Below are positions 35 through 21,732 of a DNA stretch of 64,000 nt, in pieces; the first letter of the stretch is position 1, and each line of letters starts with the position of its first letter. Both the position numbers and the translations under genes were made by a program. The stretch lies in IMG/VR virus record IMGVR_UViG_3300044712_000810, positions 186,001 through 250,000 of that record. The stretch is one strand, 5' to 3'. The notes under the pieces were generated by a model. It was given only the letters and a program-made list of their open reading frames with translations, was not told where the DNA came from and did no database searches.

Positions 35-328
35 TCATACTAACTCAATAATATACTTTTGCATTTCAAGTCGCATGTCTTCATCAAACAAAACCTCCAA
101 AGCAGGATACATGTCACGGTGAAAATCAAAGAATGCTCGTGCATGTGGAATATAAACTCGATGTTTATATTTAATTTGATCACCAATACACACATATTCT
201 TTATTAAATCTATATTTGTATTTGATTTTAAATCGTTCAAATAATTCACGTCTTGATATTAATCTGTTGTCATATATTAACTCAACAAATATATTTATTA
301 ATTTACGATCATCTGCATTATCTGTCAT
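35..328 (-). CDS. Small paralog, family A (C-terminal DDD..L.MQKY..E.V motif)
   Basis: Ends FDEDMRLEMQKYIIELV; ATGA overlap with neighbours. Confidence 0.8.
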   Translation of the reverse strand: MTDNADDRKLINIFVELIYDNRLISRRELFERFKIKYKYRFNKEYVCIGDQIKYKHRVYIPHARAFFDFHRDMYPALEVLFDEDMRLEMQKYIIELV

Positions 329-606
329 ACTCGTTCAACCACATATTTCATCATATTAAGATACATATCATCATCCATAAGTGTTAATATTATATTAGAT
401 AAAGTTGGTGGATTTTGCATTTCAGTTCCACGTTCAATAACTTTATCATTATACTTGTATACTGTGACTTCACCAAGATCTTCTTCATCATAAACACTTC
501 GTTTAATTCCTAATGGAATAAATAGCTTTATATTAAAATACCCTGGTCTTTCTTTACTTCTAAAGAAATTCATATATGTAGTTAATAGTTGTTCTCTGTT
601 TGTCAT
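325..606 (-). CDS. Small paralog, family A
   Basis: LGI..YKYNDK core; ends MDDDMYLNMMKYVVERV. Confidence 0.8.
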   Translation of the reverse strand: MTNREQLLTTYMNFFRSKERPGYFNIKLFIPLGIKRSVYDEEDLGEVTVYKYNDKVIERGTEMQNPPTLSNIILTLMDDDMYLNMMKYVVERV

Positions 607-842
607 ATTAACTCCAGTAACAGTTTTTGATACTGAACTAACAAATCAGGATCTTTAAATGCCTTAACAATAGCAGATACATCTTCAATGGTTAGATGTT
701 TATTAACCATGCGATATTCATAATTGGAATCACGTTTATAAAATCTAACTTTACCAACTTTATATTTATACATATCCATTCTAATATTTAACGCATTAAT
801 AATCCAATACGACCAACCATCTAAATTTGTTTCAGGAGCCAT
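603..842 (-). CDS. Small paralog, family A-like
   Basis: Ends DPDLLVQYQKLLLELI; start uncertain. Confidence 0.7.
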   Translation of the reverse strand: MAPETNLDGWSYWIINALNIRMDMYKYKVGKVRFYKRDSNYEYRMVNKHLTIEDVSAIVKAFKDPDLLVQYQKLLLELI

Positions 843-1111
843 TTGTTGTACCTTATAGTTAGTTGTTCATCATCAAACTTACGTATTAGTATCCATAAGT
901 TATATAAGTCATTAGGAAATTGTCGTTTAATAACAATCTTACCATAGTGTTTAGTCCATGCATTATCGGATGGGCCGGAATATTTAAATTGATATTTAGT
1001 TACGACTTTTCTATGTAAGTCATACGTATCTACTGATTTGAATTCACTATATGTTATATTTAATTCAAACAAAATTTGTGACATTCGATGAAATGTAATA
1101 TGTTTATTCAT
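821..1111 (-). CDS. Small paralog, family A-like
   Basis: WTKHYGKIVI..FP shared with 13948..14205; ends NKWLLKQI. Confidence 0.8.
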   Translation of the reverse strand: MNKHITFHRMSQILFELNITYSEFKSVDTYDLHRKVVTKYQFKYSGPSDNAWTKHYGKIVIKRQFPNDLYNLWILIRKFDDEQLTIRYNKWLLKQI

Positions 1112-1359
1112 ACAAGTAACAACAATATTTTTTGATATTGAATTTTTAGATCAATATTATCAAATTCATTCACAATAGATTCAATATCTTCTAAACATGT
1201 TACATATTCTTTACGAATTACTTCTTTATTTTTAAATGAAAATTTATATCCATCATCAAAGTTATGATACATATGAGTTTTTATCTTTAACCCATCAAGT
1301 ATCATACGAAACCGTTTGGTTGAATAAAGAATCATTACCGATTTGCCAAGAAGGTTCAT
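1108..1359 (-). CDS. Small paralog, family A-like
   Basis: Ends DLKIQYQKILLLLV. Confidence 0.75.
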   Translation of the reverse strand: MNLLGKSVMILYSTKRFRMILDGLKIKTHMYHNFDDGYKFSFKNKEVIRKEYVTCLEDIESIVNEFDNIDLKIQYQKILLLLV

Positions 1360-1589
1360 ATAAGCTCCAGTAGAAGTCGTTGATATGCGATTGTTAGTTC
1401 TTCATCGTTGATAAATTCAACGATATCGGCAAGTCCATCAATAGTTACTGGGGCAGTACCCATGATACCAATGCGTTTACCTTTATAAAATATAGCAGAA
1501 GTCGGTGTGACTTTATCATTTTCATAAATTGTAGACATTTTGATATTATTATCACGAGTAAATTTAATAAGACAATCAAAAGGATTCAT
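1356..1589 (-). CDS. Small paralog, family A-like (first gene of array)
   Basis: Start reassigned to MNPFD at 1589 behind AGGAGG SD; ends QRLLLELI. Confidence 0.8.
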   Translation of the reverse strand: MNPFDCLIKFTRDNNIKMSTIYENDKVTPTSAIFYKGKRIGIMGTAPVTIDGLADIVEFINDEELTIAYQRLLLELI

Positions 1590-1614
1590 TTTATCCTCCT
1601 TAATACACCAAACT

Positions 1615-1624
1615 ATTTCTATAT
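1615..1624 (-). promoter_or_regulatory. Putative phage promoter motif ATATAGAAAT
   Basis: Exact copy of recurring intergenic motif upstream of array start. Confidence 0.6.
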
Positions 1625-1689
1625 GAAAAGTTATAAAACTAAAAAATGGGCTATACGAGATCTTAGCCCGTATAGCCCAATAAAAAAAC

Positions 1690-5085: not shown

Positions 5086-5086
5086 A

Positions 5087-8325: not shown

Positions 8326-8337
8326 ATTGTATTATCC

Positions 8338-9825: not shown

Positions 9826-9837
9826 ATTATATTATCC

Positions 9838-11325
9838 TTAATATTTTTTATATACTTTAATTTTACCAGTGAATGCGGCAGATGGTGTTAATGTAATTGT
9901 CGTCGAAGTATCAGGTCCATTATATCTGTATGCATATTGTCCAGTTTGGATATCACTTGATGATGTTCCATTTTGCCAATTACATACAATTGTTTTTGAA
10001 TATTTAAAGAATTTTGTAATACAATGCGATGCTCCACCATAACAGGCTGAAGGTCTAGCATTATCACGACCACCTAGTGCAGAACTAGCAGAATAAAAAT
10101 AATTTCTAGCATAATTCGCGGCAGTTACATCTGCTCCAATCTGAACACCTATTGATGCAGCATTCGCATTTGGTGCATCACATACTATTTCAAGTGAATC
10201 ACAATCAGAGAAATCGATTGTAAGTGGAGCTGTACTAGCAGTATAATACTGATCATGTACAAGTTCAATGGGTTTAGTATTTTGTTTTAATAATTGTTGT
10301 GTTACTAAACGATATACTTCAACTGTTCCAGAACAATTTGCACTTGTAATAAGTTGTAATGATGTTACTGCCGATGATGTATTTGCCCATCTAGATCCAT
10401 ATACACCCATTCTATCTGTTGCATTAGTTCTATATCTTTGCATTGTGGATGTTGACAGTCGTTGTGATCCTGTTTTTAAATTAATTTCTGTAATCCAGTG
10501 CTCAGTTCCACTATTTGCAGCTGTATCACAACCACCAACCAAAAGTCCAGTATATGATGCGTTTTGTGAATCGGATGCTCCAAATAAAGTTGATCCGTTA
10601 TGTCCATAATAATTTAAAAAATAATTTGTATAAGTACTATCACCATTAGGTCTAACCCATAAATATGTAAATGCACCGGAGGCATTATATATCTTAGAAA
10701 CAATTCTAATATTTGGTGTAGATTCACCATCAATAGCAATAGTTTGATTTAATGTCGTATTATTTAAAGTATATGATCCAATTAATTCATATGTAGCTAA
10801 GTTTGTAACTTTAATATCTTGCCATTTATAAACAGTAATAGTACCAGTAAATGCGGCAGTTGCTGTTAATGTCAATGTATTCATTACAGCCGAACCAAGA
10901 TATATTGATCCATGTGTTTGAGCGTATAATACACCAGCACTTTGAATTGGATTTATATCATACCAACATTTAGATGTTTTATCGAATATAGTTTGTGTAA
11001 ATGATGGTGTTCCAACAGATAAATTAATTCCTGCGGATGTTACTTGTGATGCACCAACACTTGAACCATTATATGCAGCTATAGCTTGTTGTTTATAGTT
11101 GGCGGCAGTTTGATCTGTATCTAAATATGCATAAATAGCCGCAGAACTAGCGGAACATTGTGTTTCAATCATAAATTTAGTACAGTTACTAATATCAAAA
11201 CTACCAGAAGGTGTAGTACCATTAAATGTTAAAGTTTTTACTTTAACCCAGTTAGTATTCTCCTGTGGATTAACACCGGAAAGCCATTTACTGATATCTA
11301 GATTCTCTTGAGTAGATAATTTCAT
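9838..11325 (-). CDS. Putative virion/tail-fibre protein with three beta-rich repeats (paralog 3)
   Basis: Same conserved blocks as the other two copies. Confidence 0.65.
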   Translation of the reverse strand: MKLSTQENLDISKWLSGVNPQENTNWVKVKTLTFNGTTPSGSFDISNCTKFMIETQCSASSAAIYAYLDTDQTAANYKQQAIAAYNGSSVGASQVTSAGINLSVGTPSFTQTIFDKTSKCWYDINPIQSAGVLYAQTHGSIYLGSAVMNTLTLTATAAFTGTITVYKWQDIKVTNLATYELIGSYTLNNTTLNQTIAIDGESTPNIRIVSKIYNASGAFTYLWVRPNGDSTYTNYFLNYYGHNGSTLFGASDSQNASYTGLLVGGCDTAANSGTEHWITEINLKTGSQRLSTSTMQRYRTNATDRMGVYGSRWANTSSAVTSLQLITSANCSGTVEVYRLVTQQLLKQNTKPIELVHDQYYTASTAPLTIDFSDCDSLEIVCDAPNANAASIGVQIGADVTAANYARNYFYSASSALGGRDNARPSACYGGASHCITKFFKYSKTIVCNWQNGTSSSDIQTGQYAYRYNGPDTSTTITLTPSAAFTGKIKVYKKY

Positions 11326-11362
11326 CAATATATCTCCTATTTAAATTTTAATTACAATAAAA

Positions 11363-11386
11363 AGTGAGTGGGAATAACCCACTCAC
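11363..11386 (-). terminator. Hairpin at end of family A array
   Basis: GTGAGTGGG-AATAA-CCCACTCAC with T-run on minus strand. Confidence 0.6.
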
Positions 11387-11387: not shown

Positions 11388-11687
11388 TCATAAATCCATA
11401 ATTAATTTTTTTTGCATTTCTAATAACATATCATCGTCATATAGATTTGATATGATTTCATATAAATGTATACTTTTAAAAACATCTGGCGTGTATTTAT
11501 TTGCGTCGATGTATTTTTTTCTATTTAAGTATGTGTATACTCGAAAATCACCCGTTATACAACATTTGATTTGTAAATCTTTGAACAGTTGCGATACATA
11601 ATAGTAACCAACTGCATTTTTAATACCATCCGTACTATATTTGTTAATAAATAGCATTATTAAATCAGTATGTTCTTCTGGTATCAT
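11388..11687 (-). CDS. Small paralog, family A
   Basis: Ends YDDDMLLEMQKKLIMDL. Confidence 0.8.
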   Translation of the reverse strand: MIPEEHTDLIMLFINKYSTDGIKNAVGYYYVSQLFKDLQIKCCITGDFRVYTYLNRKKYIDANKYTPDVFKSIHLYEIISNLYDDDMLLEMQKKLIMDL

Positions 11688-11977
11688 AACAACGCTATTA
11701 TAATCTTTTGTATTTTTAATCTTTGCGAATCAGTCAATCCAAACCTATTAACTACATCAACATACATTTGTCTCATACAACTATGATAACGACTTGATAT
11801 ATTATGAATATACTCACGATGATAATACATAAACTCATTTCCAAAATCTTTAGATATTATCATATTATATTCATTTAATATTGCGATTGTTACACTCACA
11901 TTTAATATTTGTTTAATTAAAGCCTCATCTCGAACAACATCACATAATGTTTCAACTAACTCGATGTCACTACTCAT
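11684..11977 (-). CDS. Small paralog, family A
   Basis: Start MSSDIEL at ATGA overlap; ends QKIIIALL. Confidence 0.75.
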   Translation of the reverse strand: MSSDIELVETLCDVVRDEALIKQILNVSVTIAILNEYNMIISKDFGNEFMYYHREYIHNISSRYHSCMRQMYVDVVNRFGLTDSQRLKIQKIIIALL

Positions 11978-12258
11978 ATTGCATGTTCCAGTATATATTT
12001 TTGTATTTTCACGCAAAGATCTTCATCCCAGAAATGATCAACAACTTTAACGAATATTTGTTCGTGTACATATGATTCGTATGTTTCATATGTTTTATTA
12101 TTATATTTGTATAAATAAGGTGCTTTTAGGTCGAAATCTTTATCAAGATTTTCAACACTTATGTTTAACACGTTATATGGAGCAATAGCAGTTTCTGGTT
12201 CTACTACTATCCAAAATTCATGTATTAACTTTTCTTCTAACTTATTAACATTGTTCAT
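11974..12258 (-). CDS. Small paralog, family A
   Basis: Ends WDEDLCVKIQKYILEHAI. Confidence 0.8.
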   Translation of the reverse strand: MNNVNKLEEKLIHEFWIVVEPETAIAPYNVLNISVENLDKDFDLKAPYLYKYNNKTYETYESYVHEQIFVKVVDHFWDEDLCVKIQKYILEHAI

Positions 12259-12536
12259 ATTATGTGTTCCAGTACATACTTGTTTAATGCGGTTACTAGA
12301 TCTTCGTCGTACAAAGCACGAAAGACAAATACGAATGTTGAGAATCCACTAATTTGTAATGTGGATGGTAATTCATATGTTTTATCACCATGCACGAATA
12401 ATACTTGTGCATTTTCTGTAACATTAAATGTTATTCCTAACTTTTCATACATGTTTGATACTACGAATGTTCTATGTGACCAGAAGATCTTCAACAAATC
12501 CATTTCTTCATCAGACAATGGTGTTAATTTGCTCAT
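12255..12536 (-). CDS. Small paralog, family A
   Basis: Ends YDEDLVTALNKYVLEHII. Confidence 0.8.
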   Translation of the reverse strand: MSKLTPLSDEEMDLLKIFWSHRTFVVSNMYEKLGITFNVTENAQVLFVHGDKTYELPSTLQISGFSTFVFVFRALYDEDLVTALNKYVLEHII

Positions 12537-12784
12537 ATGTGTTCTACCACAAACTTCTGCATTCTAAGCATCATGTCATCATCCATCATTTCACAAATAA
12601 CATCAACCCATTGTCCATGCTCATATATTTCACCTTTATAGTGTACTCCAAAATTAGGTAAGTCCTCATCACATTCAATCTCGATATTAAGTAAATTTAG
12701 AAGTGCAGTATATCGAAAATCATATACTTTTTTAAATGTATTATAAAATAATATGGCAAACTTTCTACGTTCTAATGGAGTCAT
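12533..12784 (-). CDS. Small paralog, family A
   Basis: Ends MDDDMMLRMQKFVVEHI. Confidence 0.8.
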   Translation of the reverse strand: MTPLERRKFAILFYNTFKKVYDFRYTALLNLLNIEIECDEDLPNFGVHYKGEIYEHGQWVDVICEMMDDDMMLRMQKFVVEHI

Positions 12785-13002
12785 ATGTCAATAATTAATG
12801 CTTTAATAAGTTTTTCTCGAAGTTCATCATCAACAAGTTGTGATAATACTGTTTTCCACATTCCATGTTTTGCCATTTTATCTTTATAAAATACATATTC
12901 ATTATTATTAGACAATTCAGGTATACGTGAATATAAATCAGTATCAGGTCTTTTAAGTGCATAAAATTCATCAATTAGTTCAAACAACTCATTATCGGTC
13001 AT
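12781..13002 (-). CDS. Small paralog, family A
   Basis: Ends DDELREKLIKALIIDI; close duplicate of 12999..13217. Confidence 0.8.
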   Translation of the reverse strand: MTDNELFELIDEFYALKRPDTDLYSRIPELSNNNEYVFYKDKMAKHGMWKTVLSQLVDDELREKLIKALIIDI

Positions 13003-13217
13003 ATGTGTACTATTGCTACTTTTATAAGTTTTTCACGCAATTCATCATCAATAATTTCAGGCAAGATATCTTGCCACCAACCATGTTGTACCTTCTTACC
13101 TTTATATTCAACCCCATCACCGTGTTCTATTAATTCAGGTATATGATCATAAAGACAAAATGGTATAGGTTTATGATAAAATGAATCTATAAGTTTACAT
13201 AGTTCGTGATCTGTCAT
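12999..13217 (-). CDS. Small paralog, family A
   Basis: Ends DDELREKLIKVAIVHI. Confidence 0.8.
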   Translation of the reverse strand: MTDHELCKLIDSFYHKPIPFCLYDHIPELIEHGDGVEYKGKKVQHGWWQDILPEIIDDELREKLIKVAIVHI

Positions 13218-13485
13218 GTTTTACCTTCTGTTTACGTACTTCACGTTCAAACTGAACTATCTCAGTCATCTTTTGACGTATGTTGTCGTCTAAGATCTTA
13301 TTAAATAATATAAACCAGAAATGATCTATGCGTTCAAGTATAAAATCTCGTATGTTTGTAGTTTTATCTTTATAAGATATATTATAATTTCCATTATCTG
13401 TAATGCCAAAATATGTATAATAATTAATTTTACCATTAGTGTATAATAGAAATTCACTTATAAGTTTACGTTTACTTAATTTCAT
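13195..13485 (-). CDS. Small paralog, family A (aberrant C-terminus)
   Basis: FGI..YKDK core and LDDNIR present, but basic tail replaces the terminal motif. Confidence 0.7.
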   Translation of the reverse strand: MKLSKRKLISEFLLYTNGKINYYTYFGITDNGNYNISYKDKTTNIRDFILERIDHFWFILFNKILDDNIRQKMTEIVQFEREVRKQKVKHDRSRTM

Positions 13486-13766
13486 AGTGCTTGTATTAAA
13501 CACTTTTGAATGTTAAGTGCCATGTCTTCATCGAAAAATTGCGATAGTATTTCAAAATGATAATCACTCATTGGTTTACTATCTAATAATTCATTTGTAT
13601 CCAAAATAGTCCGACCTTTATATCCATATTCTCGACAATCACGAATGGTATTAGGATCATAATGAATTCCTATTTCACGAAAAGCATCGGTCCAAGTATG
13701 CCATATATTACCATTATAAATTATATCTAGAAATGTCCTTAATATATCTGCATCATGATGTGTCAT
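13482..13766 (-). CDS. Small paralog, family A
   Basis: Ends FDEDMALNIQKCLIQAL. Confidence 0.8.
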   Translation of the reverse strand: MTHHDADILRTFLDIIYNGNIWHTWTDAFREIGIHYDPNTIRDCREYGYKGRTILDTNELLDSKPMSDYHFEILSQFFDEDMALNIQKCLIQAL

Positions 13767-13951
13767 ACTCGCTCCAATAACCACTTGTTTAAGTTATTAG
13801 TCACATCAGGATCATTAATTTCTAATACTACTTTACATAAAACATCTACAGGAACATAAACATTATGTGATTGACTTATAATATCCGATTCTAAATAACT
13901 TACACCAAAACGATGTAATAGTATTCTTAAATGATGGACATTTGTACTCAT
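13763..13951 (-). CDS. Small paralog, family A-like
   Basis: Ends DPDVTNNLNKWLLERV. Confidence 0.7.
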   Translation of the reverse strand: MSTNVHHLRILLHRFGVSYLESDIISQSHNVYVPVDVLCKVVLEINDPDVTNNLNKWLLERV

Positions 13952-14205
13952 ATTCGTTCCAGTAAATACTTTTGATATGTTATGATGACTTGTGGATCTT
14001 CAAACTTATATAATAACTCCATAAAATCTTCTTTAGTTTCAGGAAACCCATCTATAATTATCTTACCATAATGATTGGTCCACCATTCTTCTGATTGTCC
14101 ACAATATCTAAATGCACATTTTCTTTTATTTCCAACATATCCATCAAGTCTAGTGACTCTTATTTCAGAACCACGTATATGATTTACTAATTCATAATAA
14201 GTCAT
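13948..14205 (-). CDS. Small paralog, family A-like
   Basis: WTNHYGKIII..FP; ends YQKYLLERI. Confidence 0.8.
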   Translation of the reverse strand: MTYYELVNHIRGSEIRVTRLDGYVGNKRKCAFRYCGQSEEWWTNHYGKIIIDGFPETKEDFMELLYKFEDPQVIITYQKYLLERI

Positions 14206-14453
14206 ACATGCTCCACTAAGTATTTTTGTATATTGAGTTTAAGATCCTCGTCCATAAGTTTTAAAATACTTTCACAAATATTACCTGTTCGCTTTTGATG
14301 TATATATGATTTATTATTAAATCGTAATAACCATCCATATGGCAATGATTCATCTTCAATTCCTATAACTTCAAATATACTTTTAGTAGGATCATCATTA
14401 GTATTAAATACATTCCAATATGTATATATTAAATCACGATATTCTTGATTCAT
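14202..14453 (-). CDS. Small paralog, family A
   Basis: Ends MDEDLKLNIQKYLVEHV. Confidence 0.8.
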   Translation of the reverse strand: MNQEYRDLIYTYWNVFNTNDDPTKSIFEVIGIEDESLPYGWLLRFNNKSYIHQKRTGNICESILKLMDEDLKLNIQKYLVEHV

Positions 14454-14698
14454 ATTACATGATCCAATAACCATTTTTGCATTTTGCTTCTAATATCATC
14501 ATCCATTAACATCATAAATGCATCGGACCATAATACAACTGAAGTTCGTTCTAAGTCCCATTGTGAGTAATCATATTCTTTATTTTTATATCGCATTTTA
14601 TATTTACTACTTGCGTCTATTTTGAAATACTTTAAAAATGAACAGGTATCATATGCTTCTTCAATAAACCATTTAACAAGTTCTTCATCCGAACTCAT
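14450..14698 (-). CDS. Small paralog, family A
   Basis: Ends MDDDIRSKMQKWLLDHVI. Confidence 0.8.
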   Translation of the reverse strand: MSSDEELVKWFIEEAYDTCSFLKYFKIDASSKYKMRYKNKEYDYSQWDLERTSVVLWSDAFMMLMDDDIRSKMQKWLLDHVI

Positions 14699-14949
14699 AA
14701 GTGCTCCAGTAAGTATTTTTGCATTGCCAGCCGAAGATCTTCATCCATGAATTGAATTATGACACTATGTATTGAATTAGGCCATATCCAATCGTATTTT
14801 TTATTCTTATAAATAAGATACTTATCCAAATCGTCGATATATTCCATACCGTTCTTATAAGTGTGTACTTCTATTCCGAACTCATCAAGTGTAGTAATAA
14901 ATTCAACACTATCCCAAAATAGATCTATTAATGTTTCATCGGCGTTCAT
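14695..14949 (-). CDS. Small paralog, family A
   Basis: Ends MDEDLRLAMQKYLLEHL. Confidence 0.8.
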   Translation of the reverse strand: MNADETLIDLFWDSVEFITTLDEFGIEVHTYKNGMEYIDDLDKYLIYKNKKYDWIWPNSIHSVIIQFMDEDLRLAMQKYLLEHL

Positions 14950-15242
14950 ATGAATTCCAACATAAACTTCTGTATCTTGACGAGCATGTCAACATCCATT
15001 ATTTGCATTATGATTCGTGTAAGATGATTTTTAGTCCAAGAAGAAAAGTTTTTCTTCATATGCACTTCATACATCTTATCATTGTATAAAACAAATCGTC
15101 TATTCCCGGATGGATTGCATTTGTATTGCAATCCTAAGTGTCTAAACACTCTATCGGGCAGTAATGATGTTTCTTTTTTATCACGTAACTTAATAATATA
15201 AGAATTCACTAAGTCTCTAGTGATTAACTTCTCTTGTTTCAC
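14946..15242 (-). CDS. Small paralog, family A
   Basis: GTG start behind AGGAG; ends MDVDMLVKIQKFMLEFI. Confidence 0.8.
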   Translation of the reverse strand: MKQEKLITRDLVNSYIIKLRDKKETSLLPDRVFRHLGLQYKCNPSGNRRFVLYNDKMYEVHMKKNFSSWTKNHLTRIIMQIMDVDMLVKIQKFMLEFI

Positions 15243-15273
15243 GTGTGCTCCTGTAATTATTATTTACCTGTAT

Positions 15274-15283
15274 ATTTCTATAT
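15274..15283 (-). promoter_or_regulatory. Putative phage promoter motif ATATAGAAAT
   Basis: Between terminator hairpin (15304-15329) and next sub-array. Confidence 0.6.
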
Positions 15284-15303
15284 GAAATCTTGAATAATAA
15301 AAA

Positions 15304-15329
15304 AGTGGACGGGCATATGCCCAATCCAC
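15304..15329 (-). terminator. Terminator-like hairpin
   Basis: GTGGA..GGGCA-TA-TGCCC..TCCAC with T-run on minus strand. Confidence 0.55.
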
Positions 15330-15331
15330 GG

Positions 15332-15634
15332 TTAAAGTCTTTTTAATACTATTTTTTGTAAGTTTATTCTCATGTCGTCATCATATAACGTTTGAAGAAT
15401 ATACTTTATATCTCTAAATTGAAGTGACATTGATGGTGTCTTCAATACCTTGTTTTTATATTTAATTTTTGTTGACATTTTATCAACTGATGCGAACTTA
15501 AAACCAAAATCATTAATTAATAAATGTAATATATCAGCTATATTATATTGTGTAACATGTTTAAAGAATTGATCAATTAAGAAATCCTTTTCATCCATAT
15601 CAACTAAGTCACCATCTAGATCTAATTCCATCAT
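15332..15634 (-). CDS. Small paralog, family A
   Basis: Ends YDDDMRINLQKIVLKRL. Confidence 0.8.
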   Translation of the reverse strand: MMELDLDGDLVDMDEKDFLIDQFFKHVTQYNIADILHLLINDFGFKFASVDKMSTKIKYKNKVLKTPSMSLQFRDIKYILQTLYDDDMRINLQKIVLKRL

Positions 15635-15867
15635 ATGCGATCCAATATGTATTTCATCATTTTAAGTTTCATATCATCATCATAAAAGTAACATAATATT
15701 CTATATAATGGTACATCATATAAAGTCTTTACCTTTACAGTAAATTGTTTATCTTTATATTTATATTTAATATACTGATTTGACATTTGAACATGTGTAA
15801 TATCCAAATGATAAAATATATCTTTGCCTACTGATAAATATGTTTTGACTAATATAGTATCAATCAT
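15631..15867 (-). CDS. Small paralog, family A
   Basis: Ends YDDDMKLKMMKYILDRI. Confidence 0.8.
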   Translation of the reverse strand: MIDTILVKTYLSVGKDIFYHLDITHVQMSNQYIKYKYKDKQFTVKVKTLYDVPLYRILCYFYDDDMKLKMMKYILDRI

Positions 15868-16118
15868 ACATACTCCAATAAGTATTTTTGCATTTTAAGT
15901 GTCATGTCATCATCGACAAGCGATTCAATTGTACTCCAGAAAGCATTGATTAATACCTTCTTATGAAACTCTTTATACTCTATTTCAAATATCATTGGTT
16001 GTCCCATCATATTATGTCGTTTAACACTAATACCTAACATGCTAAGTATAGTTAAATCATTATGTATGTATTTAGACATTACATTAAAACATGTGTTTAA
16101 TAATGTTTCATCATTCAT
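15864..16118 (-). CDS. Small paralog, family A
   Basis: Ends VDDDMTLKMQKYLLEYV. Confidence 0.8.
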   Translation of the reverse strand: MNDETLLNTCFNVMSKYIHNDLTILSMLGISVKRHNMMGQPMIFEIEYKEFHKKVLINAFWSTIESLVDDDMTLKMQKYLLEYV

Positions 16119-16363
16119 ATGCGTTCCACCAATAGTTTAAGCATTTTAATCCTTATATCTTCGTCCATAAATTGTTTTAGTACATGTGACCAATAACCAT
16201 ATCGGTCATTATCAGTAATAGGATCAATGATATATTCCTGATCTTTATAATATATTGCTTCGTAATTAAGTTGTTCATAATATGTAAGTCCAAAGTATTC
16301 ATAATACTTTACTGGGCCGAAGGTCTCTTCAAGAAACCATTCGATAAGTTTATCATCGGTCAT
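16115..16363 (-). CDS. Small paralog, family A
   Basis: Ends MDEDIRIKMLKLLVERI. Confidence 0.8.
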   Translation of the reverse strand: MTDDKLIEWFLEETFGPVKYYEYFGLTYYEQLNYEAIYYKDQEYIIDPITDNDRYGYWSHVLKQFMDEDIRIKMLKLLVERI

Positions 16364-16647
16364 ATGTGTTCAACCACATATTTTTGCATTTTTATATATA
16401 ATTCATCATCCATAATGTCGTATAACATGTTTATCCAACTATTTAAATCATATTTAGAACAGTGTGGATCAATAGCATATTTAAGTATTTCTACTTTTTT
16501 ATTTTTGTATTTAAAATATTCCATAAATGTTTTTTCTTTACTTGGAACTCCATATACTCCAAATGATTCTAGTGTATCCCATAAATTATATGGAGGTAAT
16601 TCAAATATTAATCTGAATGTTAATATAAATGTTTTATCATATTTCAT
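16360..16647 (-). CDS. Small paralog, family A
   Basis: Ends MDDELYIKMQKYVVEHI. Confidence 0.8.
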   Translation of the reverse strand: MKYDKTFILTFRLIFELPPYNLWDTLESFGVYGVPSKEKTFMEYFKYKNKKVEILKYAIDPHCSKYDLNSWINMLYDIMDDELYIKMQKYVVEHI

Positions 16648-16946
16648 ATGTGTTCCAATATATATTTCTGCATTTTAATTAATATATCATCATCAAAGAT
16701 TTCACAGAATGCATCAATCCATTTTTGTTTACCTACTGGAGTATTTGCAAGTCCGATTTTATAAATATAATGTTGTTTATTTTTGTATTTATAATGTATA
16801 TCACCATACAGAGCTTTAGGATTATATCCATCGCGATCTTCGCTACGTGAATAATCTGTGAATTCAAAGTATTCACGATATACAATATCGTTAATTGATA
16901 ATTCAACAAATGTTTTTATAAAGTCGTAGTAAGGATGTTGATTCAT
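16644..16946 (-). CDS. Small paralog, family A
   Basis: Ends FDDDILIKMQKYILEHI. Confidence 0.8.
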   Translation of the reverse strand: MNQHPYYDFIKTFVELSINDIVYREYFEFTDYSRSEDRDGYNPKALYGDIHYKYKNKQHYIYKIGLANTPVGKQKWIDAFCEIFDDDILIKMQKYILEHI

Positions 16947-17206
16947 AATGTTTTAATTATAAATTTTTGCATGTTCACGCGAAGATCTTCATCCATAAAA
17001 TGATTTAATATATATCTAAATGAATCACGATTCCATGAAGCGCCACCGTCGATTTCATATCGACATGGAGGATCATTTATATTCATCGATTTATCTTTAT
17101 AATGAATACGTTCAGGAAATGTAATTCCAATTTGATAGAATACAGTCCTGTATGGTTTGTGTTTTAGTTCATGGTCAAGATACAACTCGATTAGATCTTT
17201 GTCCAC
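16943..17206 (-). CDS. Small paralog, family A
   Basis: Ends MDEDLRVNMQKFIIKTL. Confidence 0.8.
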   Translation of the reverse strand: MDKDLIELYLDHELKHKPYRTVFYQIGITFPERIHYKDKSMNINDPPCRYEIDGGASWNRDSFRYILNHFMDEDLRVNMQKFIIKTL

Positions 17207-17532
17207 TACAACGCCTCCAGTAAGTATTTTTGTATTGCAATTCTGATATCATCATTGAATATTTGTTTCATGCATCTATAGACTGAATCACGTTGTAGTT
17301 TTGATAAATAGTATCTGTATTCAGGAACATCTATATTAATTTTTTTATTATTTAACTGTACTTCTATACCATCGTAATGTGTTTTAGTGACATAATGATA
17401 TAAAGATATATAGTTCCACTCAATATTTAAAGTTTGCAATAGGTGTTCAAATGAATAGTTCTTATATCCATTAATATAATAACAGTGCGCGTCAATAAAC
17501 AAGTTCACAAGTCTGCAATCAGCCAGTTTCAT
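17206..17532 (-). CDS. Small paralog, family A
   Basis: Ends FNDDIRIAIQKYLLEAL. Confidence 0.8.
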   Translation of the reverse strand: MKLADCRLVNLFIDAHCYYINGYKNYSFEHLLQTLNIEWNYISLYHYVTKTHYDGIEVQLNNKKINIDVPEYRYYLSKLQRDSVYRCMKQIFNDDIRIAIQKYLLEAL

Positions 17533-17795
17533 ATGTGTTCCAGTAAGTACTTCTGCATTTTGAGAATCATATCATCATCAACAATCCTCATTAAAGTATC
17601 TTGCCATGTTTCAGTATGAAACTCATGCATTTTCATTTCAAATATAATATTACCATTAATCTCAAATATCATATCACAATCTAATCTATGGAGTTTAAAA
17701 TCCAAAAACTCATCTATACTTTTATTACTTGTATTTTCATAACCAAAATACATATCACAAAACATATTAACTAACTCTTGTGTCGTGGATTCCAT
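17529..17795 (-). CDS. Small paralog, family A
   Basis: Ends VDDDMILKMQKYLLEHI. Confidence 0.8.
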   Translation of the reverse strand: MESTTQELVNMFCDMYFGYENTSNKSIDEFLDFKLHRLDCDMIFEINGNIIFEMKMHEFHTETWQDTLMRIVDDDMILKMQKYLLEHI

Positions 17796-17813
17796 GTATG
17801 GTTCCCAAACCCG

Positions 17814-18116
17814 TTATATATTTTCTATTATGTACTTTTGCATATTAAGTATGAGTCTTTCATCATGTAATTTATGAAACAATTGAATATAATTACCACG
17901 TTTCCATTTAGATAAATGTTTGCAGTTATTAATAGTAAACACTCGATTATCATATGTAACTTTAAGAGTACGTTGTTGATATTTATAAGTGATATCAAGT
18001 ACATCAAATATATCCATCCAATAAAGGTAACTTTTATCTTTACTTTTAAAGTAATTTAGAAACAGTAGTACTTCATCAGGGGCTTTAGGAAACACGTAAC
18101 ACTCCTTACAGTTCAA
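17814..18116 (-). CDS. Small paralog, family A
   Basis: Ends HDERLILNMQKYIIENI. Confidence 0.8.
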   Translation of the reverse strand: MNCKECYVFPKAPDEVLLFLNYFKSKDKSYLYWMDIFDVLDITYKYQQRTLKVTYDNRVFTINNCKHLSKWKRGNYIQLFHKLHDERLILNMQKYIIENI

Positions 18117-18387
18117 CGATTAAATGTTTTATCATATTGAGACGTATGTCGTCATCAAAGAAGTATCTGATTACTTCATAATAATTTCTAGTTCCATACT
18201 TGTGTTTAAGATCTTCCGCCCATAACTGTTTACCTTTATACTCATAATATAATACTGCTAACCTATATTCAGGATTATCTACTAATTTAATTTTAATTGG
18301 ATCATAATAATCTCTAAACCTTAATGTTACTAATGAATTAATTGAACTAACATACTTTCGCATTAGATTGTAATCGTCCAATAACAT
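18106..18387 (-). CDS. Small paralog, family A
   Basis: Ends FDDDIRLNMIKHLIVEL. Confidence 0.8.
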   Translation of the reverse strand: MLLDDYNLMRKYVSSINSLVTLRFRDYYDPIKIKLVDNPEYRLAVLYYEYKGKQLWAEDLKHKYGTRNYYEVIRYFFDDDIRLNMIKHLIVEL

Positions 18388-18388
18388 A

Positions 18389-18718
18389 TTATAAGTCCAT
18401 GATCAATTGTTTTTGTATGTTTATCTCAATGTCTTGATCAAAGAAATGTCTTATCACAGTAACATTACGTCTTTCCCAATCATATTGTATGTAATTACAA
18501 TTAGTAAGGTTAATGTAGTTATCTTTATATTTTAAATATAATGAATAAGTTCGATAATCATAATGTTGATTGATATTTAGATTAGTTAATATCGCATGAT
18601 CTCGATCCATTGCACTTTTATCACGATATAATGCAATATACTTTCGTAGTAATATATATTGATGCTTCAGTACTAATGGTGGTTTATGATATATTTGCAT
18701 AAACGGAACAACTGTCAT
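18389..18718 (-). CDS. Small paralog, family A
   Basis: Ends FDQDIEINIQKQLIMDL. Confidence 0.8.
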   Translation of the reverse strand: MTVVPFMQIYHKPPLVLKHQYILLRKYIALYRDKSAMDRDHAILTNLNINQHYDYRTYSLYLKYKDNYINLTNCNYIQYDWERRNVTVIRHFFDQDIEINIQKQLIMDL

Positions 18719-19059
18719 TACAACTCCTGTATTACATACTTCTGAACGTTAAGAAACAACTCATCATCCATAAAGTGCAATATAATACGTGGAACTTCAG
18801 TACGCCACCATGATACATGTTTCATATTTTGAGTATCGTATATTATAGTCATGTCTTTATAAGTGTATTCTGTTGCAGATGCATCATTATGTTCATTATT
18901 AGAAGTAATTCCAATATCTTTGAATTGTGTTTGTCTAGTTAAAGCATATTGTATTCCAATTTTTATTTGCATTTTAATATATTGATTGACTATTTTACGA
19001 TATTTTCTTTTATTGATTTGATTAATTGTTAGTAGTTCAGACATTTTTATTGTAGTCAA
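18718..19059 (-). CDS. Small paralog, family A
   Basis: TTG start behind GAGG; ends MDDELFLNVQKYVIQEL. Confidence 0.8.
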   Translation of the reverse strand: MTTIKMSELLTINQINKRKYRKIVNQYIKMQIKIGIQYALTRQTQFKDIGITSNNEHNDASATEYTYKDMTIIYDTQNMKHVSWWRTEVPRIILHFMDDELFLNVQKYVIQEL

Positions 19060-19342
19060 TGTTTTAGTACCTCAGGTTGTAGTTTTAGACTTGTAATATT
19101 ATAAACCTAAAAAATCAAATTTGACAACTTCAAGACTTTGCTTTAAGTAATTTTTGATTTTTCTTACAATATAACATCATAAACAAAATCACGACAACCA
19201 ATGTGTAAATTTTTACAACCACGATGGTCAAAAATTAAATAAAACCCAGTCCCATGTGAAATAAAATATAATATAATGGGGAGTACTACTAGTATAGCAA
19301 TACTCCCATCATGACATACGAGTAAAGAGTATTAAAAAGTAC

Positions 19343-19672
19343 TTACTGATCGGACACTTTACCATATAATTGATGATCATCATGTTTATCTAGTAAATTA
19401 TTACTAGGTTTCTTTTTAGGGAACATAGGAAATACCTTATTGTGTTGTAAATATGCTGGTTTCTTACCTTCTAATTCTCTTTTCTTTTGTCTTGCTGCAG
19501 TTTCTCTTGCTTTTTGTTCATTATATGCTGCAAATCCTTTTTTAGCTGCAATAATGTGTGCAGATGTAACATCAACTCTTTTTGCTTTTTTAGCAATAGG
19601 ATGATTAGATGGATACACCATTTCATTTAATATAGTTTCTAAAATGGATAACATAATTATAAATAACCTCAC
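19343..19672 (-). CDS. Basic hypothetical protein
   Basis: Lys/Ala-rich ORF; true start probably MLSILE. Confidence 0.55.
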   Translation of the reverse strand: MRLFIIMLSILETILNEMVYPSNHPIAKKAKRVDVTSAHIIAAKKGFAAYNEQKARETAARQKKRELEGKKPAYLQHNKVFPMFPKKKPSNNLLDKHDDHQLYGKVSDQ

Positions 19673-19675
19673 TTT

Positions 19676-19969
19676 TTATATTTTAATACTTACATCATAT
19701 CCAGACATACACTGACTATTAACAAAGTCCAATACTGTTTTATAATTTTCATTCATTTTCATATGTTCTTTAATTAATATATCATCAGTATCTAATAACG
19801 ATAATTTAACTAACATTTTAGTAGATAAACTACCACGTGTAAAAGTAAATAATACATCGCTTTTAAAATAACCATACATAGTTAAAATTGTAATACCATG
19901 ATTTGTAATGAAGGCTTTGGCCGGAGATCTAAGTAATAAATCACATACGTGTTGTTCTAGTGTATTCAT
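19676..19969 (-). CDS. Small paralog, family B (MNxLE...KI)
   Basis: Starts MNTLEQHV, ends VSIKI. Confidence 0.75.
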   Translation of the reverse strand: MNTLEQHVCDLLLRSPAKAFITNHGITILTMYGYFKSDVLFTFTRGSLSTKMLVKLSLLDTDDILIKEHMKMNENYKTVLDFVNSQCMSGYDVSIKI

Positions 19970-20187
19970 ATCTTCACTATAAATGTAAAATTATGAAAAG
20001 TACAATAGTAACTACGTTTTACATTTATATCTAATTCACATGGATCAACTAAACTAATATGTATTCCACGAGATTTAAACACCAAACCAAATTTAGTTTT
20101 ATAATAATTAATAGTTGGAGTATATTTATAAAATTCAATCTCAGTAGATCTTAATAGTTGATACACGTGTCTTTCTAAAGCATTCAT
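19966..20187 (-). CDS. Small paralog, family B
   Basis: MNALERHV...KTKFG...IVKI. Confidence 0.75.
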   Translation of the reverse strand: MNALERHVYQLLRSTEIEFYKYTPTINYYKTKFGLVFKSRGIHISLVDPCELDINVKRSYYCTFHNFTFIVKI

Positions 20188-20450
20188 ATCTTTATTCTCA
20201 CTTGTCCTCCGTAGTCACGTATAAAGTCACTGAAATTATTATAAGACTTAAAGAAGTATTCTTGATTGAATAATGTAGTGGTTGCTACTAGAAGACAAAT
20301 AAGATCTCTATCAGTAGGCATTCTTTCTGCGTCAATTACAAAACTAAGATACTGCGTTTTTAAGACAGTACCATCTTCTGTAAAATACATTTGAAATGTA
20401 TTACCTTTTATTAATAACAGATTAAATACTTCTTGTTCTAATACATTCAT
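20184..20450 (-). CDS. Small paralog, family B
   Basis: MNVLEQEV...RIKI. Confidence 0.75.
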   Translation of the reverse strand: MNVLEQEVFNLLLIKGNTFQMYFTEDGTVLKTQYLSFVIDAERMPTDRDLICLLVATTTLFNQEYFFKSYNNFSDFIRDYGGQVRIKI

Positions 20451-20665
20451 ATCTTAACCTGAAATTGATTATTACTAATATCTTGTGTTATTATAGCAGA
20501 TGGATCTGCTTTAAATTCACCATTATAAGGAGTTATAGAATTATGTGTATGAGATGATTTAAATATACCAAGTCTAGTACGGTATATAGCATCATGTATT
20601 GTACAATAGTAATCAACAGTACTTCCAACTAATAAATCACGAACATATGTTTCTAAGATATTCAT
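20447..20665 (-). CDS. Small paralog, family B
   Basis: MNILETYV...RTRLG...QVKI. Confidence 0.75.
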   Translation of the reverse strand: MNILETYVRDLLVGSTVDYYCTIHDAIYRTRLGIFKSSHTHNSITPYNGEFKADPSAIITQDISNNQFQVKI

Positions 20666-20937
20666 ATCTTAAGATCCATATCACAAAGTTCATAACCAAA
20701 ATTAAATTGAAAATAATCAAATAACCCTGTCATGAGATATTGATGTGATACACCATGAGAAATATCATTAGGAATACTTTGACCGACATAAACAAATGTC
20801 ATACCATCTTTATTATTGACATATTCAACTTTGTATACACCATAATTGGTTTTAACAAAGGTACCTTTTTGACGTACATATAGTACTCCAGATGAATTAA
20901 GTATTTTATCTAAAACATACTGTTCTAAGATATTCAT
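20662..20937 (-). CDS. Small paralog, family B
   Basis: MNILEQYV...KTNYG...DLKI. Confidence 0.75.
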   Translation of the reverse strand: MNILEQYVLDKILNSSGVLYVRQKGTFVKTNYGVYKVEYVNNKDGMTFVYVGQSIPNDISHGVSHQYLMTGLFDYFQFNFGYELCDMDLKI

Positions 20938-21224
20938 AGTTTTATCACAAAATAAGCATTATCGAATGATGTTTTATTTACTTCTTCTGATTTAGGATCG
21001 AATCCTTTCTTATGAATAGTTAATGTAGTGAAAACATCATTGTTTGGAGGAGCATGTGTAAATGTACCTATTCTAGTATGATATACATATCTATCTGTTC
21101 CTGTATACACATCATAATACTTATACCATTCACATTCAATAAACTGCAATAAATGATATATATGACGTTCTAATGCATTCATTTTATAATAATAGTATTT
21201 GAATGTTTTATCTGTTGTTGTCAT
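20934..21224 (-). CDS. Small paralog, family B
   Basis: Internal MNALERHI (ATG at 21182) matches family start; ends VIKL. Confidence 0.7.
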   Translation of the reverse strand: MTTTDKTFKYYYYKMNALERHIYHLLQFIECEWYKYYDVYTGTDRYVYHTRIGTFTHAPPNNDVFTTLTIHKKGFDPKSEEVNKTSFDNAYFVIKL

Positions 21225-21484
21225 ATTTTTATTTCCGCTGTTTCATACATGGCTAACTCATTAAATAATCTATCGGTTTCATGTATTGACATTACGTTGG
21301 TTATTATAAGTTGATCACAATGATATGTTAATATATATCTAGATTTAGGATTAAGAGGATATTCTAATTTGAGATATCCAAGATCTTCAAAATCAAATAT
21401 AAAAGTATCAGTTCTTGCTATTCTGTATATTTCAGGCTTTATTGGGCCGAAGATCTCTTTAAGTGTGCGTTCAAGATAGTTCAT
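21221..21484 (-). CDS. Small paralog, family B
   Basis: MNYLERTLKEI...EIKI; close duplicate of next gene. Confidence 0.75.
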   Translation of the reverse strand: MNYLERTLKEIFGPIKPEIYRIARTDTFIFDFEDLGYLKLEYPLNPKSRYILTYHCDQLIITNVMSIHETDRLFNELAMYETAEIKI

Positions 21485-21732
21485 ATCTTAATTATCCACT
21501 GGTCGAATGTTTTATATTTACAACTTTGTTGTATTGTAGTTTGTCTTTCTAAGATTACACTGTTAGAATTAAATTCATAAGTATAACGAAATATATCATC
21601 TGAATTAGTATCAAGAAAAAGACATCCTAATTCTTTAAAATCGAGTATAAAAACATCGGCATCTTTATGTGCATAAACTATTGGAGATAAATTAGTAATA
21701 ATCTCTTTAAGTGTGCGCTCAAGGTAGTTCAT
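21481..21732 (-). CDS. Small paralog, family B
   Basis: MNYLERTLKEI...IIKI. Confidence 0.75.
   Translation of the reverse strand: MNYLERTLKEIITNLSPIVYAHKDADVFILDFKELGCLFLDTNSDDIFRYTYEFNSNSVILERQTTIQQSCKYKTFDQWIIKI

What the first reader, a model, noticed from the sequence alone, without database searches (positions are those of the whole stretch)
11388..19059. Array of 28 diverged small paralogs (family A), with a further block at 35-1589
Seen: head-to-tail 60-113 aa genes, mostly joined by ATGA overlaps, sharing L(I/V)..F near the start, (L/F)GI and YK.K.Y in the middle and DDD...MQK at the end, with highly variable sequence between. Recent duplicates exist (12781/12999; 821/13948). A terminator and promoter at about 15.3 kb split the array into two units. 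Inference: an accordion-like expanded repertoire under diversifying selection, such as anti-defence or host-takeover effectors with variable surfaces.
Basis: partly seen in the sequence, partly recalled or inferred. Interest (0 to 1): 0.6.

Follow-up and report, generated by a model that had tools for sequence, protein, structure and literature searches.

The report
44-copy small-protein family in jumbo phage
A 315-kb uncultured soil phage devotes about 8% of its genes to 44 very diverged copies of one small protein that has no known relatives or clear known fold; its function is untested, but the genes sit in tightly coupled operons behind what looks like the phage's early promoter, which fits a set of proteins that bind or block host targets.

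Summary
Positions 11388-19059 carry 28 head-to-tail minus-strand genes of one family, and 20 of the 27 junctions are ATGA overlaps. Six more members lie at 35-1589 and ten more upstream of the window. That makes 44 members in a 314,837-bp jumbo phage with terminal repeats, from a rhizosphere metagenome.

- **Relatives:** Pfam, PHROGs, PADLOC and PDB give nothing. A profile search of 1.84 billion proteins finds only two foreign members, on tiny metagenome contigs, and those are also in tandem.
- **Structure:** AlphaFold models of two divergent members are confident (pLDDT 88 and 83). They share a helix, three strands and two helices, with no significant structural match (best Z 4.6).
- **Conservation:** The hydrophobic core and a small polar set (DDD, QK, Y-K-x-K) are conserved. 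Everything else varies, and pI runs from 4.1 to 9.9.
- **Transcription:** A terminator followed by an exact copy of a genome-wide AT-rich phage promoter splits the array at 15.3 kb. By analogy with other phages that encode two RNA polymerases, this is the early promoter class.
- **Not supported:** "recent duplicates" and "accordion". The closest pair is 51% identical with saturated synonymous sites, and the tree is a star.

The function as early host-directed binders or inhibitors is inferred, not shown.

The parts
15332..19059 (-). Unit 1 of the family A array: 13 genes. They are 18718-19059 (start possibly 19044), 18389-18718, 18106-18387, 17814-18116, 17529-17795, 17206-17532, 16943-17206, 16644-16946, 16360-16647, 16115-16363, 15864-16118, 15631-15867 and 15332-15634.
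   Evidence: HMM hits at E 1.7e-23 to 3.6e-16; alignments A1 and A2; junctions.
11388..15242 (-). Unit 2 of the family A array: 15 genes. They are 14946-15242, 14695-14949, 14450-14698, 14202-14453, 13948-14205, 13763-13951, 13482-13766, 13195-13485, 12999-13217, 12781-13002, 12533-12784, 12255-12536, 11974-12258, 11684-11977 and 11388-11687. Starts are corrected to the ATGA junction where the longest ORF ran further upstream.
   Evidence: HMM hits. The corrected starts agree with the lengths of the database gene calls and with the in-frame ATGA junctions.
15273..15304 (-). Phage promoter motif heading unit 2: upstream box TTTTATTATT at 15304-15293 and core TATAGAAATA at 15282-15273. An SD (AGGAG) and the GTG start at 15242 follow.
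   Evidence: Zero-mismatch match to the 17-mer ATTTCATATAGAAATAT. There are about 110 copies genome-wide, and the exact core occurs 61 times against 5.3 expected. Sequence read.
15301..15323 (-). Intrinsic-terminator-like hairpin (TGGGCATATGCCCG) plus T-run, ending unit 1.
   Evidence: sequence.
11364..11386 (-). Intrinsic-terminator-like hairpin (GTGAGTGGG-TTATT-CCCACTCAC, then TTTTTATT), ending the array 2 nt after the last stop codon.
   Evidence: 9 pairs, 6 of them G-C.
19098..19127 (-). Sigma-70-like site (TTGTCA-18-TATAAT) 39 nt upstream of unit 1. Its status is uncertain. The phage promoter motif is absent from the 283-nt leader at 19060-19342.
   Evidence: Sites of this quality occur 27 times genome-wide, about the chance level. 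The leader holds no repeated motif.
19279..19307 (-). 13-bp hairpin between the upstream operon (family B plus a 109-aa gene) and unit 1. It may be a terminator, but the tail is only moderately T-rich.
35..1589 (-). In-window part of the second family A block: 6 genes at 1356-1589, 1108-1359, 821-1111, 603-842, 325-606 and 35-328. The block continues upstream of the window with 8 more genes in the same operon and 2 more at genome 182167-182837.
   Evidence: HMM built only from the 28 array genes: E 3.7e-16, 6.3e-14, 1.7e-5, 3.9e-5, 7.4e-5 and 1.6e-4. Full list.
1614..1650 (-). Phage promoter motif heading the second block: TTTTCATATAGAAATAG, then AAGGAGG and the ATG at 1589.
   Evidence: genome 187629, minus strand.

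Best explanation
**Shown**
- Family A is a lineage-specific expansion of one small domain. [quoted passage not shown]
- The proteins are 62-113 aa and lack long hydrophobic segments, so they are probably soluble.
- Two divergent members are predicted with confidence to share a compact core: helix, three-stranded antiparallel sheet, two C-terminal helices.
- The buried hydrophobic positions and a small polar set are conserved: the Y-K-x-K hairpin, the DDD cap and the QK of the last helix. The rest, including net charge, varies freely.
- The genes form polycistronic units of 13, 15 and 14 genes, closed by hairpin terminators. The stop of each gene usually overlaps the next ATG. The conserved Leu-Glu codons near each C-terminus often spell a GGAG/GGAA ribosome-binding site for the next gene, so translation is probably coupled.

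**Inferred**
- Two of these three units, and a foreign relative's array, start right after the phage's abundant AT-rich promoter. In phages with virion and non-virion RNA polymerases, this kind of motif is the early, virion-polymerase promoter. The family would then be made in the first minutes of infection.
- The most likely role is a repertoire of non-enzymatic binder or inhibitor proteins on one scaffold. Each copy would have a different surface aimed at a different host target (takeover or counter-defence) or at a competing element.
- The expansion is old and has been maintained. It is not a recent amplification.
For: - **Family size and limits:**
- **Coding selection:** synonymous codon use at conserved residues. 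All 44 frames are open. dN is below dS in the closest pairs.
- **Fold:** pLDDT 88.1 / pTM 0.75 for 14695-14949 and pLDDT 83.1 / pTM 0.68 for the divergent 603-842, with the same order of elements.
- **Conserved core, variable remainder, pI 4.1-9.9:**
- **Operon anatomy:**
- **Promoter:**. It is depleted from the 70-150 kb large-gene module that holds the terminase. It also occurs in foreign contigs with 50% identical RNAP, and directly before the family A gene of L010.
- **Two RNAP sets:**
- **Early-promoter analogy:** the review PMC7598289 states that the bioinformatically visible AT-rich motif in such phages has proved to be the early virion-RNAP promoter wherever it was tested.
- **Fold-search hints:** among the weak, non-significant rows are the small phage inhibitors AcrIIA4 and T7 Gp1.2.
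Against: - No experiment or expression data exist. No RNA run holds the locus.
- Unit 1 lacks the promoter motif, so its timing is open.
- No member matches any known anti-defence, defence or host-takeover family.
- The structural similarities to inhibitors are within noise (Z 3.1-4.3, TM 0.50 or lower).
- Known anti-defence loci are usually mixtures of unrelated genes, not 44 paralogs.
- Positive selection could not be shown.
- The conserved polar set could be purely structural: a helix cap and a salt bridge.
Confidence: 0.45

Rival explanations
1. Adaptor family with a common hub. The conserved polar patch and last helix dock every member onto one shared phage or host machine, such as a polymerase, a protease or a compartment shell, or onto each other. 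The variable faces recruit different clients, so the repertoire redirects one machine to many targets.
For: The conserved polar residues (D69, D/E70, D71, Q77, K78, K48, K50) stand out against otherwise free variation, including charge. Equal-dose, translationally coupled expression would suit members that share a partner.
Against: No partner was identified. The conserved residues may only cap and stabilise helix 4. The dimer prediction could not be run.
Confidence: 0.15
2. Nucleic-acid-binding regulators or genome-structuring proteins, comparable to the roughly 35-copy zinc-ribbon expansion of Bacillus phage G. Each copy would recognise a different DNA or RNA site.
For: A precedent exists for a large expansion of small putative DNA binders in a jumbo phage (PMC7824862). 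The helix/three-strand/helix order recalls dsRBD, HicA and SRP9/14 arrangements, and such entries recur among the weak matches.
Against: 23 of the 44 members are acidic (pI below 6) and only 11 are basic. No basic patch is conserved and there is no HTH or zinc motif. All structural matches have Z below 5. The HicA catalytic histidine has no conserved counterpart.
Confidence: 0.12
3. Virion-associated or assembly proteins: internal or ejected proteins, decoration or scaffolding paralogs, as seen in some giant phages.
For: Giant phages do carry paralogous head proteins (titles and abstracts). The array lies next to triplicated tail-fibre-like genes at 2124-11328.
Against: The units are separated from those genes by a terminator. 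Two of the three large units are driven by the promoter type that is depleted from the large-gene terminase module. The proteins are very small, and no cleavage or structural family matches.
Confidence: 0.07
4. A recent genomic accordion: copy number was amplified lately under acute selection and is now diversifying.
For: Tandem arrangement. Accordion dynamics are documented in poxviruses and T-even phages (PMC13359090, PMC9391042, PMC13096335).
Against: No pair exceeds 51% aa / 62% nt identity, and dS is saturated. DNA repeats are limited to 55-109 nt at 60-78% identity. The tree is a star, and physical neighbours are hardly closer than distant copies: 23% against 20% identity.
Confidence: 0.03
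5. Functionless filler: duplicated DNA kept only to fill the capsid, or drifting as junk.
For: No function is known. The array is more AT-rich than the genome, 27.5-29% against 33% GC.
Against: All 44 frames are intact despite saturated divergence. The core residues are conserved through synonymous codons. Start/stop coupling and terminators are maintained. Foreign relatives keep the same organisation.
Confidence: 0.05

Closest known systems
Lineage-specific expansion of a zinc ribbon (about 35 copies) in Bacillus phage G (Iyer et al. 2021, PMC7824862)
   Same: A jumbo phage carries tens of copies of one very small domain confined to its own lineage. The function is unknown and was proposed from context only.
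   Different: Family A has no Cys/His metal motif and a different predicted fold. It has 44 copies, more than the 35 that paper called unprecedented. Its members sit in strict head-to-tail, ATGA-coupled operons.
Genomic accordions and multigene families of large DNA viruses (poxvirus K3L, Elde 2012 as cited in PMC13359090; T4 tifA amplification, PMC9391042; T6 SegB-driven amplification, PMC13096335)
   Same: Tandem paralogs in a large virus genome, thought to serve host antagonism.
   Different: Those are recent amplifications with near-identical, unstable copies. Family A copies have a median identity of 20% and saturated synonymous sites. It would be at most the long-term residue of such a process.
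Early small-gene clusters of large virulent phages (for example the SPO1 host-takeover module and early operons of phiKZ/AR9-type phages; the SPO1 details are from my own knowledge)
   Same: Dense operons of genes under 120 aa, behind strong phage-specific early-type promoters and closed by terminators.
   Different: Those clusters are mostly unrelated genes. Here one family fills the operons. The timing is inferred from the promoter type only.
Small phage inhibitor proteins with a helix/three-strand/two-helix layout: AcrIIA4 (5vzl_C, 5vw1_B) and T7 Gp1.2 (7u65_G)
   Same: Similar size. For AcrIIA4, the same order of secondary-structure elements, as I recall it from the literature rather than tested here. 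Both appear among the best rows for the family A models.
   Different: Similarity is within noise (Z 3.1-4.3, TM 0.47-0.50, identity 3-16%). There is no sequence relationship and no acr-aca type locus.
dsRBD-like / HicA toxin fold
   Same: A helix, three antiparallel strands, then a helix. HicA and dsRBD entries recur in the lists.
   Different: Z is 3.1-4.4. Family A has an extra C-terminal helix, and usually an extra N-terminal one. There is no conserved histidine, no HicB-like neighbour and no conserved basic surface.

Membership tests
Recent genomic accordion (poxvirus/T4 type) | Near-identical tandem copies produced by recent recombination | tested here: not met
   Maximum identity is 51% aa / 62% nt and dS is at least 1.07. 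The longest DNA repeat is 109 nt at 72%.
Recent genomic accordion (poxvirus/T4 type) | Copy number varies between close relatives or within populations | tested here: inconclusive
   No close relative is available. Contigs of two rhizosphere runs cover only fragments and show no variants.
Lineage-specific expansion of a small domain in a jumbo phage | Many paralogs in one genome, absent or rare outside the lineage | tested here: met
   44 copies. Only 2 foreign representatives among 1.84 billion proteins. Phages with 45-54% identical RNAP exist, yet they contribute no other detectable hit.
Phage G-type zinc-ribbon expansion | Cys/His zinc-ribbon motif | tested here: not met
   No conserved Cys or His column in A2. 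No Pfam hit for any of the 45 sequences.
Anti-CRISPR AcrIIA4-like / known anti-defence proteins | Significant sequence or structural similarity to a characterised inhibitor | tested here: not met
   AcrIIA4 gives Z 3.1-3.8 and TM 0.47-0.50; Gp1.2 gives Z 4.3. No PDB sequence hit.
Anti-CRISPR AcrIIA4-like / known anti-defence proteins | Inhibition of a defence system | not testable with these tools
   Needs expression of members against defence-system libraries.
HicA toxin / dsRBD-like | Significant fold match, a conserved catalytic His, and a HicB partner gene | tested here: not met
   Z 3.1-3.6 and Foldseek E 1.5. His is not conserved: H83 occurs in 13 of 45. All neighbours are family A genes.
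Early (virion-RNAP) genes of two-RNAP jumbo phages | The genome encodes two beta/beta' sets | tested here: met
   Beta' matches at genome 245810 and 313086; beta matches at 253969 and 4469.
Early (virion-RNAP) genes of two-RNAP jumbo phages | The operon is headed by the conserved AT-rich motif shared by the presumed early operons | tested here: met
   Met for unit 2 (core 15282-15273), for the block at 35-1589 (about 1623-1614) and for foreign L010. Not met for unit 1.
Early (virion-RNAP) genes of two-RNAP jumbo phages | Transcripts appear early and independently of host RNAP and protein synthesis | not testable with these tools
   No cultured host. No RNA run holds the locus.

The most novel reading that the evidence does not exclude
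The array is a germline-encoded binder library of a virus. One previously undescribed mini-fold serves as scaffold, and 44 fixed surface variants are made together at the start of infection, each pre-adapted to neutralise a different host defence or competitor. In the adaptor version, each variant hands a different host protein to one shared machine through the conserved DDD/QK patch. That would be a phage counterpart of repertoire-type recognition systems, and a new source of compact binding scaffolds.
Probability: 0.1. Interest if true: 0.85.

Novelty: new member of a known kind. Interest (0 to 1): 0.55.

Why it matters
- **Size.** With 44 copies, family A exceeds the roughly 35-copy zinc-ribbon expansion of phage G that a 224-genome survey of jumbo phages called unprecedented. 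I did not survey phage genomes myself.
- **Novelty of the protein.** The family has no entry in Pfam or PHROGs, has a confident predicted structure and has no convincing structural neighbour.
- **What it could test.** Why giant phages keep large sets of small orphan genes is an open question. A single family with 44 natural variants on one scaffold is a convenient test case. Members can be synthesised and screened in parallel for toxicity, binding partners and counter-defence activity. The conserved versus variable positions give a ready map for mutagenesis.
- **Side result.** The promoter motif found on the way gives a first transcription map for an uncultured clade of 280-315 kb phages.

Tried and rejected
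- **Megablast of the array against 50,697 phage records:** no match.
- **Family libraries:** Pfam, PHROGs and PADLOC on all 45 sequences gave only scattered single hits at E of 0.0006 or worse. A PDB profile search had a best E of 2.6. ESM Atlas gave no usable hit by features or by structure.
- **Word-index protein search with the family profile:** only the genome's own proteins.
- **Degenerate DNA pattern over IMG/VR:** 39 single-hit loci, and none holds a family member by HMM.
- **JGI metagenome scans:** the peptide pattern gave 273 candidates, none confirmed. The DNA pattern gave one locus, L050, which is an unrelated eukaryote-like contig and was dropped without further use.
- **RNAP beta' as bait in IMG/VR:** nothing close. 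In GenBank phages only 21-32% identity, to AR9-, phiR1-37- and S6-type and other phages.
- **Whole-record search of the 282-295 kb relatives behind L051-L053:** those records are not held. Their 12-22 kb loci contain no member.
- **Reads:** contigs of two rhizosphere runs cover only fragments. A second study holds identical 151-nt pieces at depth about 2. There is no variant information.
- **Family A versus the neighbouring family B:** unrelated, hhalign probability 0.1%.
- **Sigma-70-like promoter for unit 1:** cannot be told from chance, with 27 equally good sites genome-wide. The 283-nt leader has no repeated motif and there is no Rfam hit in 1-24000.
- **dN/dS:** synonymous sites are saturated even in the closest pairs, so no selection test is valid.
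- **Phylogeny:** 36 of 44 inner branches are unsupported. The only structure is a subgroup with the D-P-D/Q...YQK tail (603, 821, 1108, 1356, 13763, 13948; support 89/87) that spans both blocks.

Full report
**Setting**

The window is bases 186001-250000 of a 314,837-bp IMG/VR virus record with direct terminal repeats, 33% G+C and a completeness estimate of 100%. The only runs that hold the array are two rhizosphere metagenomes from two studies. One is probably the source. The other carries identical 151-nt pieces at low depth.

The genome encodes two sets of multisubunit RNA polymerase beta/beta' homologues. That places it with the jumbo phages that carry a virion and a non-virion polymerase (PMC7824862, PMC7598289). 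Its beta' is only 21-32% identical to those of cultured phages. It is 45-54% identical to proteins on uncultured contigs of up to 294 kb. The phage therefore belongs to an undescribed clade.

**The observation**

- An HMM made from the 28 array genes finds 44 ORFs in the genome and nothing else, and iteration adds none.
- 28 members fill 11388-19059 without gaps. Six lie at 35-1589, and ten lie just upstream of the window.
- Family A accounts for 44 of about 527 genes and is by far the largest paralog group. The next has 9 members.
- ATGA stop/start overlaps join 20 of 27 junctions in the array and 30 of 41 overall. Several apparent long overlaps disappear when the start is moved to the ATGA, and the resulting lengths agree with independent gene calls.
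- The motifs L(I/V)..F, (L/F)GI, YK.K.Y and DDD...QK are true alignment columns. They are encoded by varying synonymous codons.
- In about 60% of junctions the conserved Leu-Glu codons form a TGGAG/TGGAA element 8-12 nt before the next ATG. Part of the C-terminal conservation therefore doubles as a ribosome-binding site.

**What is not right**

The two pairs called recent duplicates are the closest pairs, but they are old.
- They are 51% and 34-45% identical in protein and 62% and 56% in DNA, with dS above 1.
- Median pairwise identity is 20.5%, and neighbours are barely closer than distant copies.
- The maximum-likelihood tree is a star with terminal branches near 1.85 substitutions per site. 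Physical blocks are not clades.
- One subgroup with a D-P-D/Q...YQK tail spans both blocks, so copies have moved between blocks.
- DNA similarity between copies is confined to the last 55-109 nt, at 60-78% identity.

This is an ancient, maintained expansion, not an accordion caught in the act.

**Structure**

With the family itself as the alignment, AlphaFold2 gives confident models for two members.
- The typical member (14695-14949) reaches pLDDT 88.1 and pTM 0.75. Its helices are at 3-12, 17-23, 60-67 and 70-83, and its strands at 27-30, 43-47 and 50-54.
- A member of the divergent subgroup (603-842) reaches pLDDT 83.1 and pTM 0.68. Its helices are at 8-17, 52-61 and 65-78, and its strands at 21-27, 30-36 and 42-45.
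- The shared core is helix, three antiparallel strands and two helices. The typical form adds an N-terminal helix.

No library gives a significant match.
- Foldseek against PDB had a best E of 0.5-0.7.
- BFVD had a best E of 0.078 with TM 0.49.
- The exhaustive aligner had a best Z of 4.6 for both models, below the tool's own noise guide.
- ESM Atlas stayed below TM 0.5.
- Recurrent weak rows are dsRBD, HicA and SRP9/14 arrangements and two small phage inhibitors, AcrIIA4 and T7 Gp1.2. I treat these as a description of the topology, not as kinship.

**Conservation pattern**

Conserved columns are mainly the hydrophobic positions with helical or strand periodicity. Added to these are Y47, K48, K50, D69, D/E70, D71, Q77, K78 and E82. 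All other positions are close to random. Loop lengths vary between strands 1 and 2 and after strand 3, and pI ranges from 4.1 to 9.9. No member has a long hydrophobic run. That the variable positions lie on the surface is inferred from their periodicity. I had no access to model coordinates.

**Transcription**

The spacer at 15.3 kb holds a hairpin with a T-run, followed by the sequence ATTTCATATAGAAATAT. That 17-mer, preceded by a TTTAATATT-like box, recurs about 110 times in the genome.
- The exact 10-nt core occurs 61 times against 5.3 expected. Half of the copies fall in the 6% of the genome that is non-coding.
- The motif typically sits after a terminator and 20-40 nt before an SD and start codon, including before tRNA genes.
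- It is almost absent on the sense strand of the 70-150 kb module of large genes that contains the terminase.
- It also occurs in foreign contigs with about 50% identical RNAP, and directly in front of the family A gene on foreign contig L010.
- According to PMC7598289, every two-polymerase jumbo phage has such a bioinformatically visible AT-rich motif before its presumed early operons. Wherever it was tested, it was the early promoter read by the virion polymerase. Middle and late promoters are not found this way.

By that analogy, unit 2 (15242 to 11388, 15 genes) and the second block (1589 downwards, 14 genes) are early operons.

Unit 1 (19059 to 15332, 13 genes) has no such motif. It has a 283-nt leader with a hairpin and a sigma-70-like site that is no better than chance. 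It may be read through from the upstream operon, whose promoter lies near 23021, or it may use an unrecognised promoter.

**Distribution**

A profile search of 1.84 billion representative proteins returned 39 hits. Of these, 37 are the genome's own and two are foreign. The foreign ones lie on 717-bp and 518-bp ENA contigs of 25-26% G+C. These carry three and two family members in tandem, again with 4-nt overlaps. They are at most 41% identical to any of the 44.

The family thus exists in at least two other phages and keeps its array form, but it is not conserved copy for copy. It is undetectable in the wider clade at this sensitivity. Scans of IMG/VR and of JGI metagenome contigs found nothing more.

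**Interpretation**

Firmly established:
- a very large, old, lineage-restricted family;
- small, probably soluble proteins (no long hydrophobic run) with one confident, unclassified predicted fold;
- purifying selection on the fold, but not on the remaining positions;
- co-expression in translationally coupled operons.

Early timing is a reasonable inference for two of the three large units.

The function is inferred only. The combination of small size, lack of catalytic-looking conserved residues, free variation of surface and charge, early-type promoters and rarity outside the lineage fits a repertoire of binders or inhibitors directed at host or competitor targets. I put this at about 0.45.

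A version in which the conserved patch docks all members onto one hub gets 0.15. Nucleic-acid-binding regulators, as proposed for the phage G zinc-ribbon expansion, get 0.12. Virion proteins, junk DNA and a recent accordion are less likely, for the reasons given under the rivals.

**Novelty**

Lineage-specific expansions in giant viruses and phages are a known phenomenon. This family, however, is not in any library searched. Its copy number exceeds the phage G case that was called unprecedented, and its predicted fold has no convincing neighbour. I file it as a new member of a known kind, of moderate to good interest because it is easy to test experimentally.

**Limits**
- There is no expression, proteome or host information.
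- No close relative is available for orthologue-based selection tests.
- Both structure models rest on the same paralog alignment.
- L050, a chance pattern match with eukaryote-like ORFs, was screened once with the family HMM and not used further.

Noticed in passing
Genome-wide; in the window e.g. 15273-15304 (-), 1614-1650 (-), about 23021 (-), 23056-23072 (+), 44778 (+), 52574 (+), 54034 (+): A strongly conserved AT-rich promoter-like motif, atTTtaATATT-N6-tttcaTATAGAAATA, occurs about 110 times (exact core 61 against 5.3 expected). It usually follows a GC-rich terminator hairpin and precedes an SD and start codon or tRNA genes. It is depleted from the large-gene terminase module and is shared with foreign contigs of the same uncultured clade. 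It is probably the early virion-RNAP promoter of the clade.
   Followed up: partly
window 19676-22258 (-): A second head-to-tail family (family B): 10 genes of 72-97 aa that start MN.LE..V and end (I/V)KI, all joined by ATGA overlaps. It is unrelated to family A by profile comparison (probability 0.1%). At its head sits a Cys-rich 76-aa gene (22255-22485), and a 109-aa Lys-rich gene (19343-19672) follows it.
   Followed up: partly
window 2124-5085 (-) and 6883-11328 (-): Two tandem triplications lie between the family A blocks. One is three proteins of about 320 aa with a phage tail-collar domain (45-49% identical). The other is three proteins of about 490 aa (38-41% identical) with nearly identical N-termini. 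They are probably receptor-binding or tail-fibre paralogs.
   Followed up: partly
window 5087-6337, 29961-31202, 31196-32143, 33404-34543, 34816-36042 (-): Five radical SAM-type paralogs, two of them 40% identical (5087-6337, which has a SPASM domain, and 34816-36042). This is an unusual load of radical SAM enzymes for a phage, and their role is unknown.
   Followed up: no
window 13195-13503 (-): This family A member lacks the usual ATGA stop. It runs 16 residues further as a basic tail (REVRKQKVKHDRSRTM) and overlaps the next gene by 23 nt.
   Followed up: no
window 58883-60847 (+); genome 253969-255330, 313086-313289, 4469-5689: There are two sets of split RNA polymerase beta/beta' homologues. 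The set in and near the window lies downstream of copies of the promoter motif, as expected for the non-virion enzyme if the motif is early.
   Followed up: partly
window 12000-22000: The small-gene arrays are more AT-rich (27.5-29% G+C) than the genome mean (33%).
   Followed up: no
L052:12373-18865 and L051 (foreign contigs with 48-50% identical RNAP beta'): Related uncultured jumbo phages also have long runs of 55-110 aa head-to-tail genes next to their RNAP genes, but none matches family A. Dense small-gene arrays seem typical of the clade, with different families in different members.
   Followed up: no
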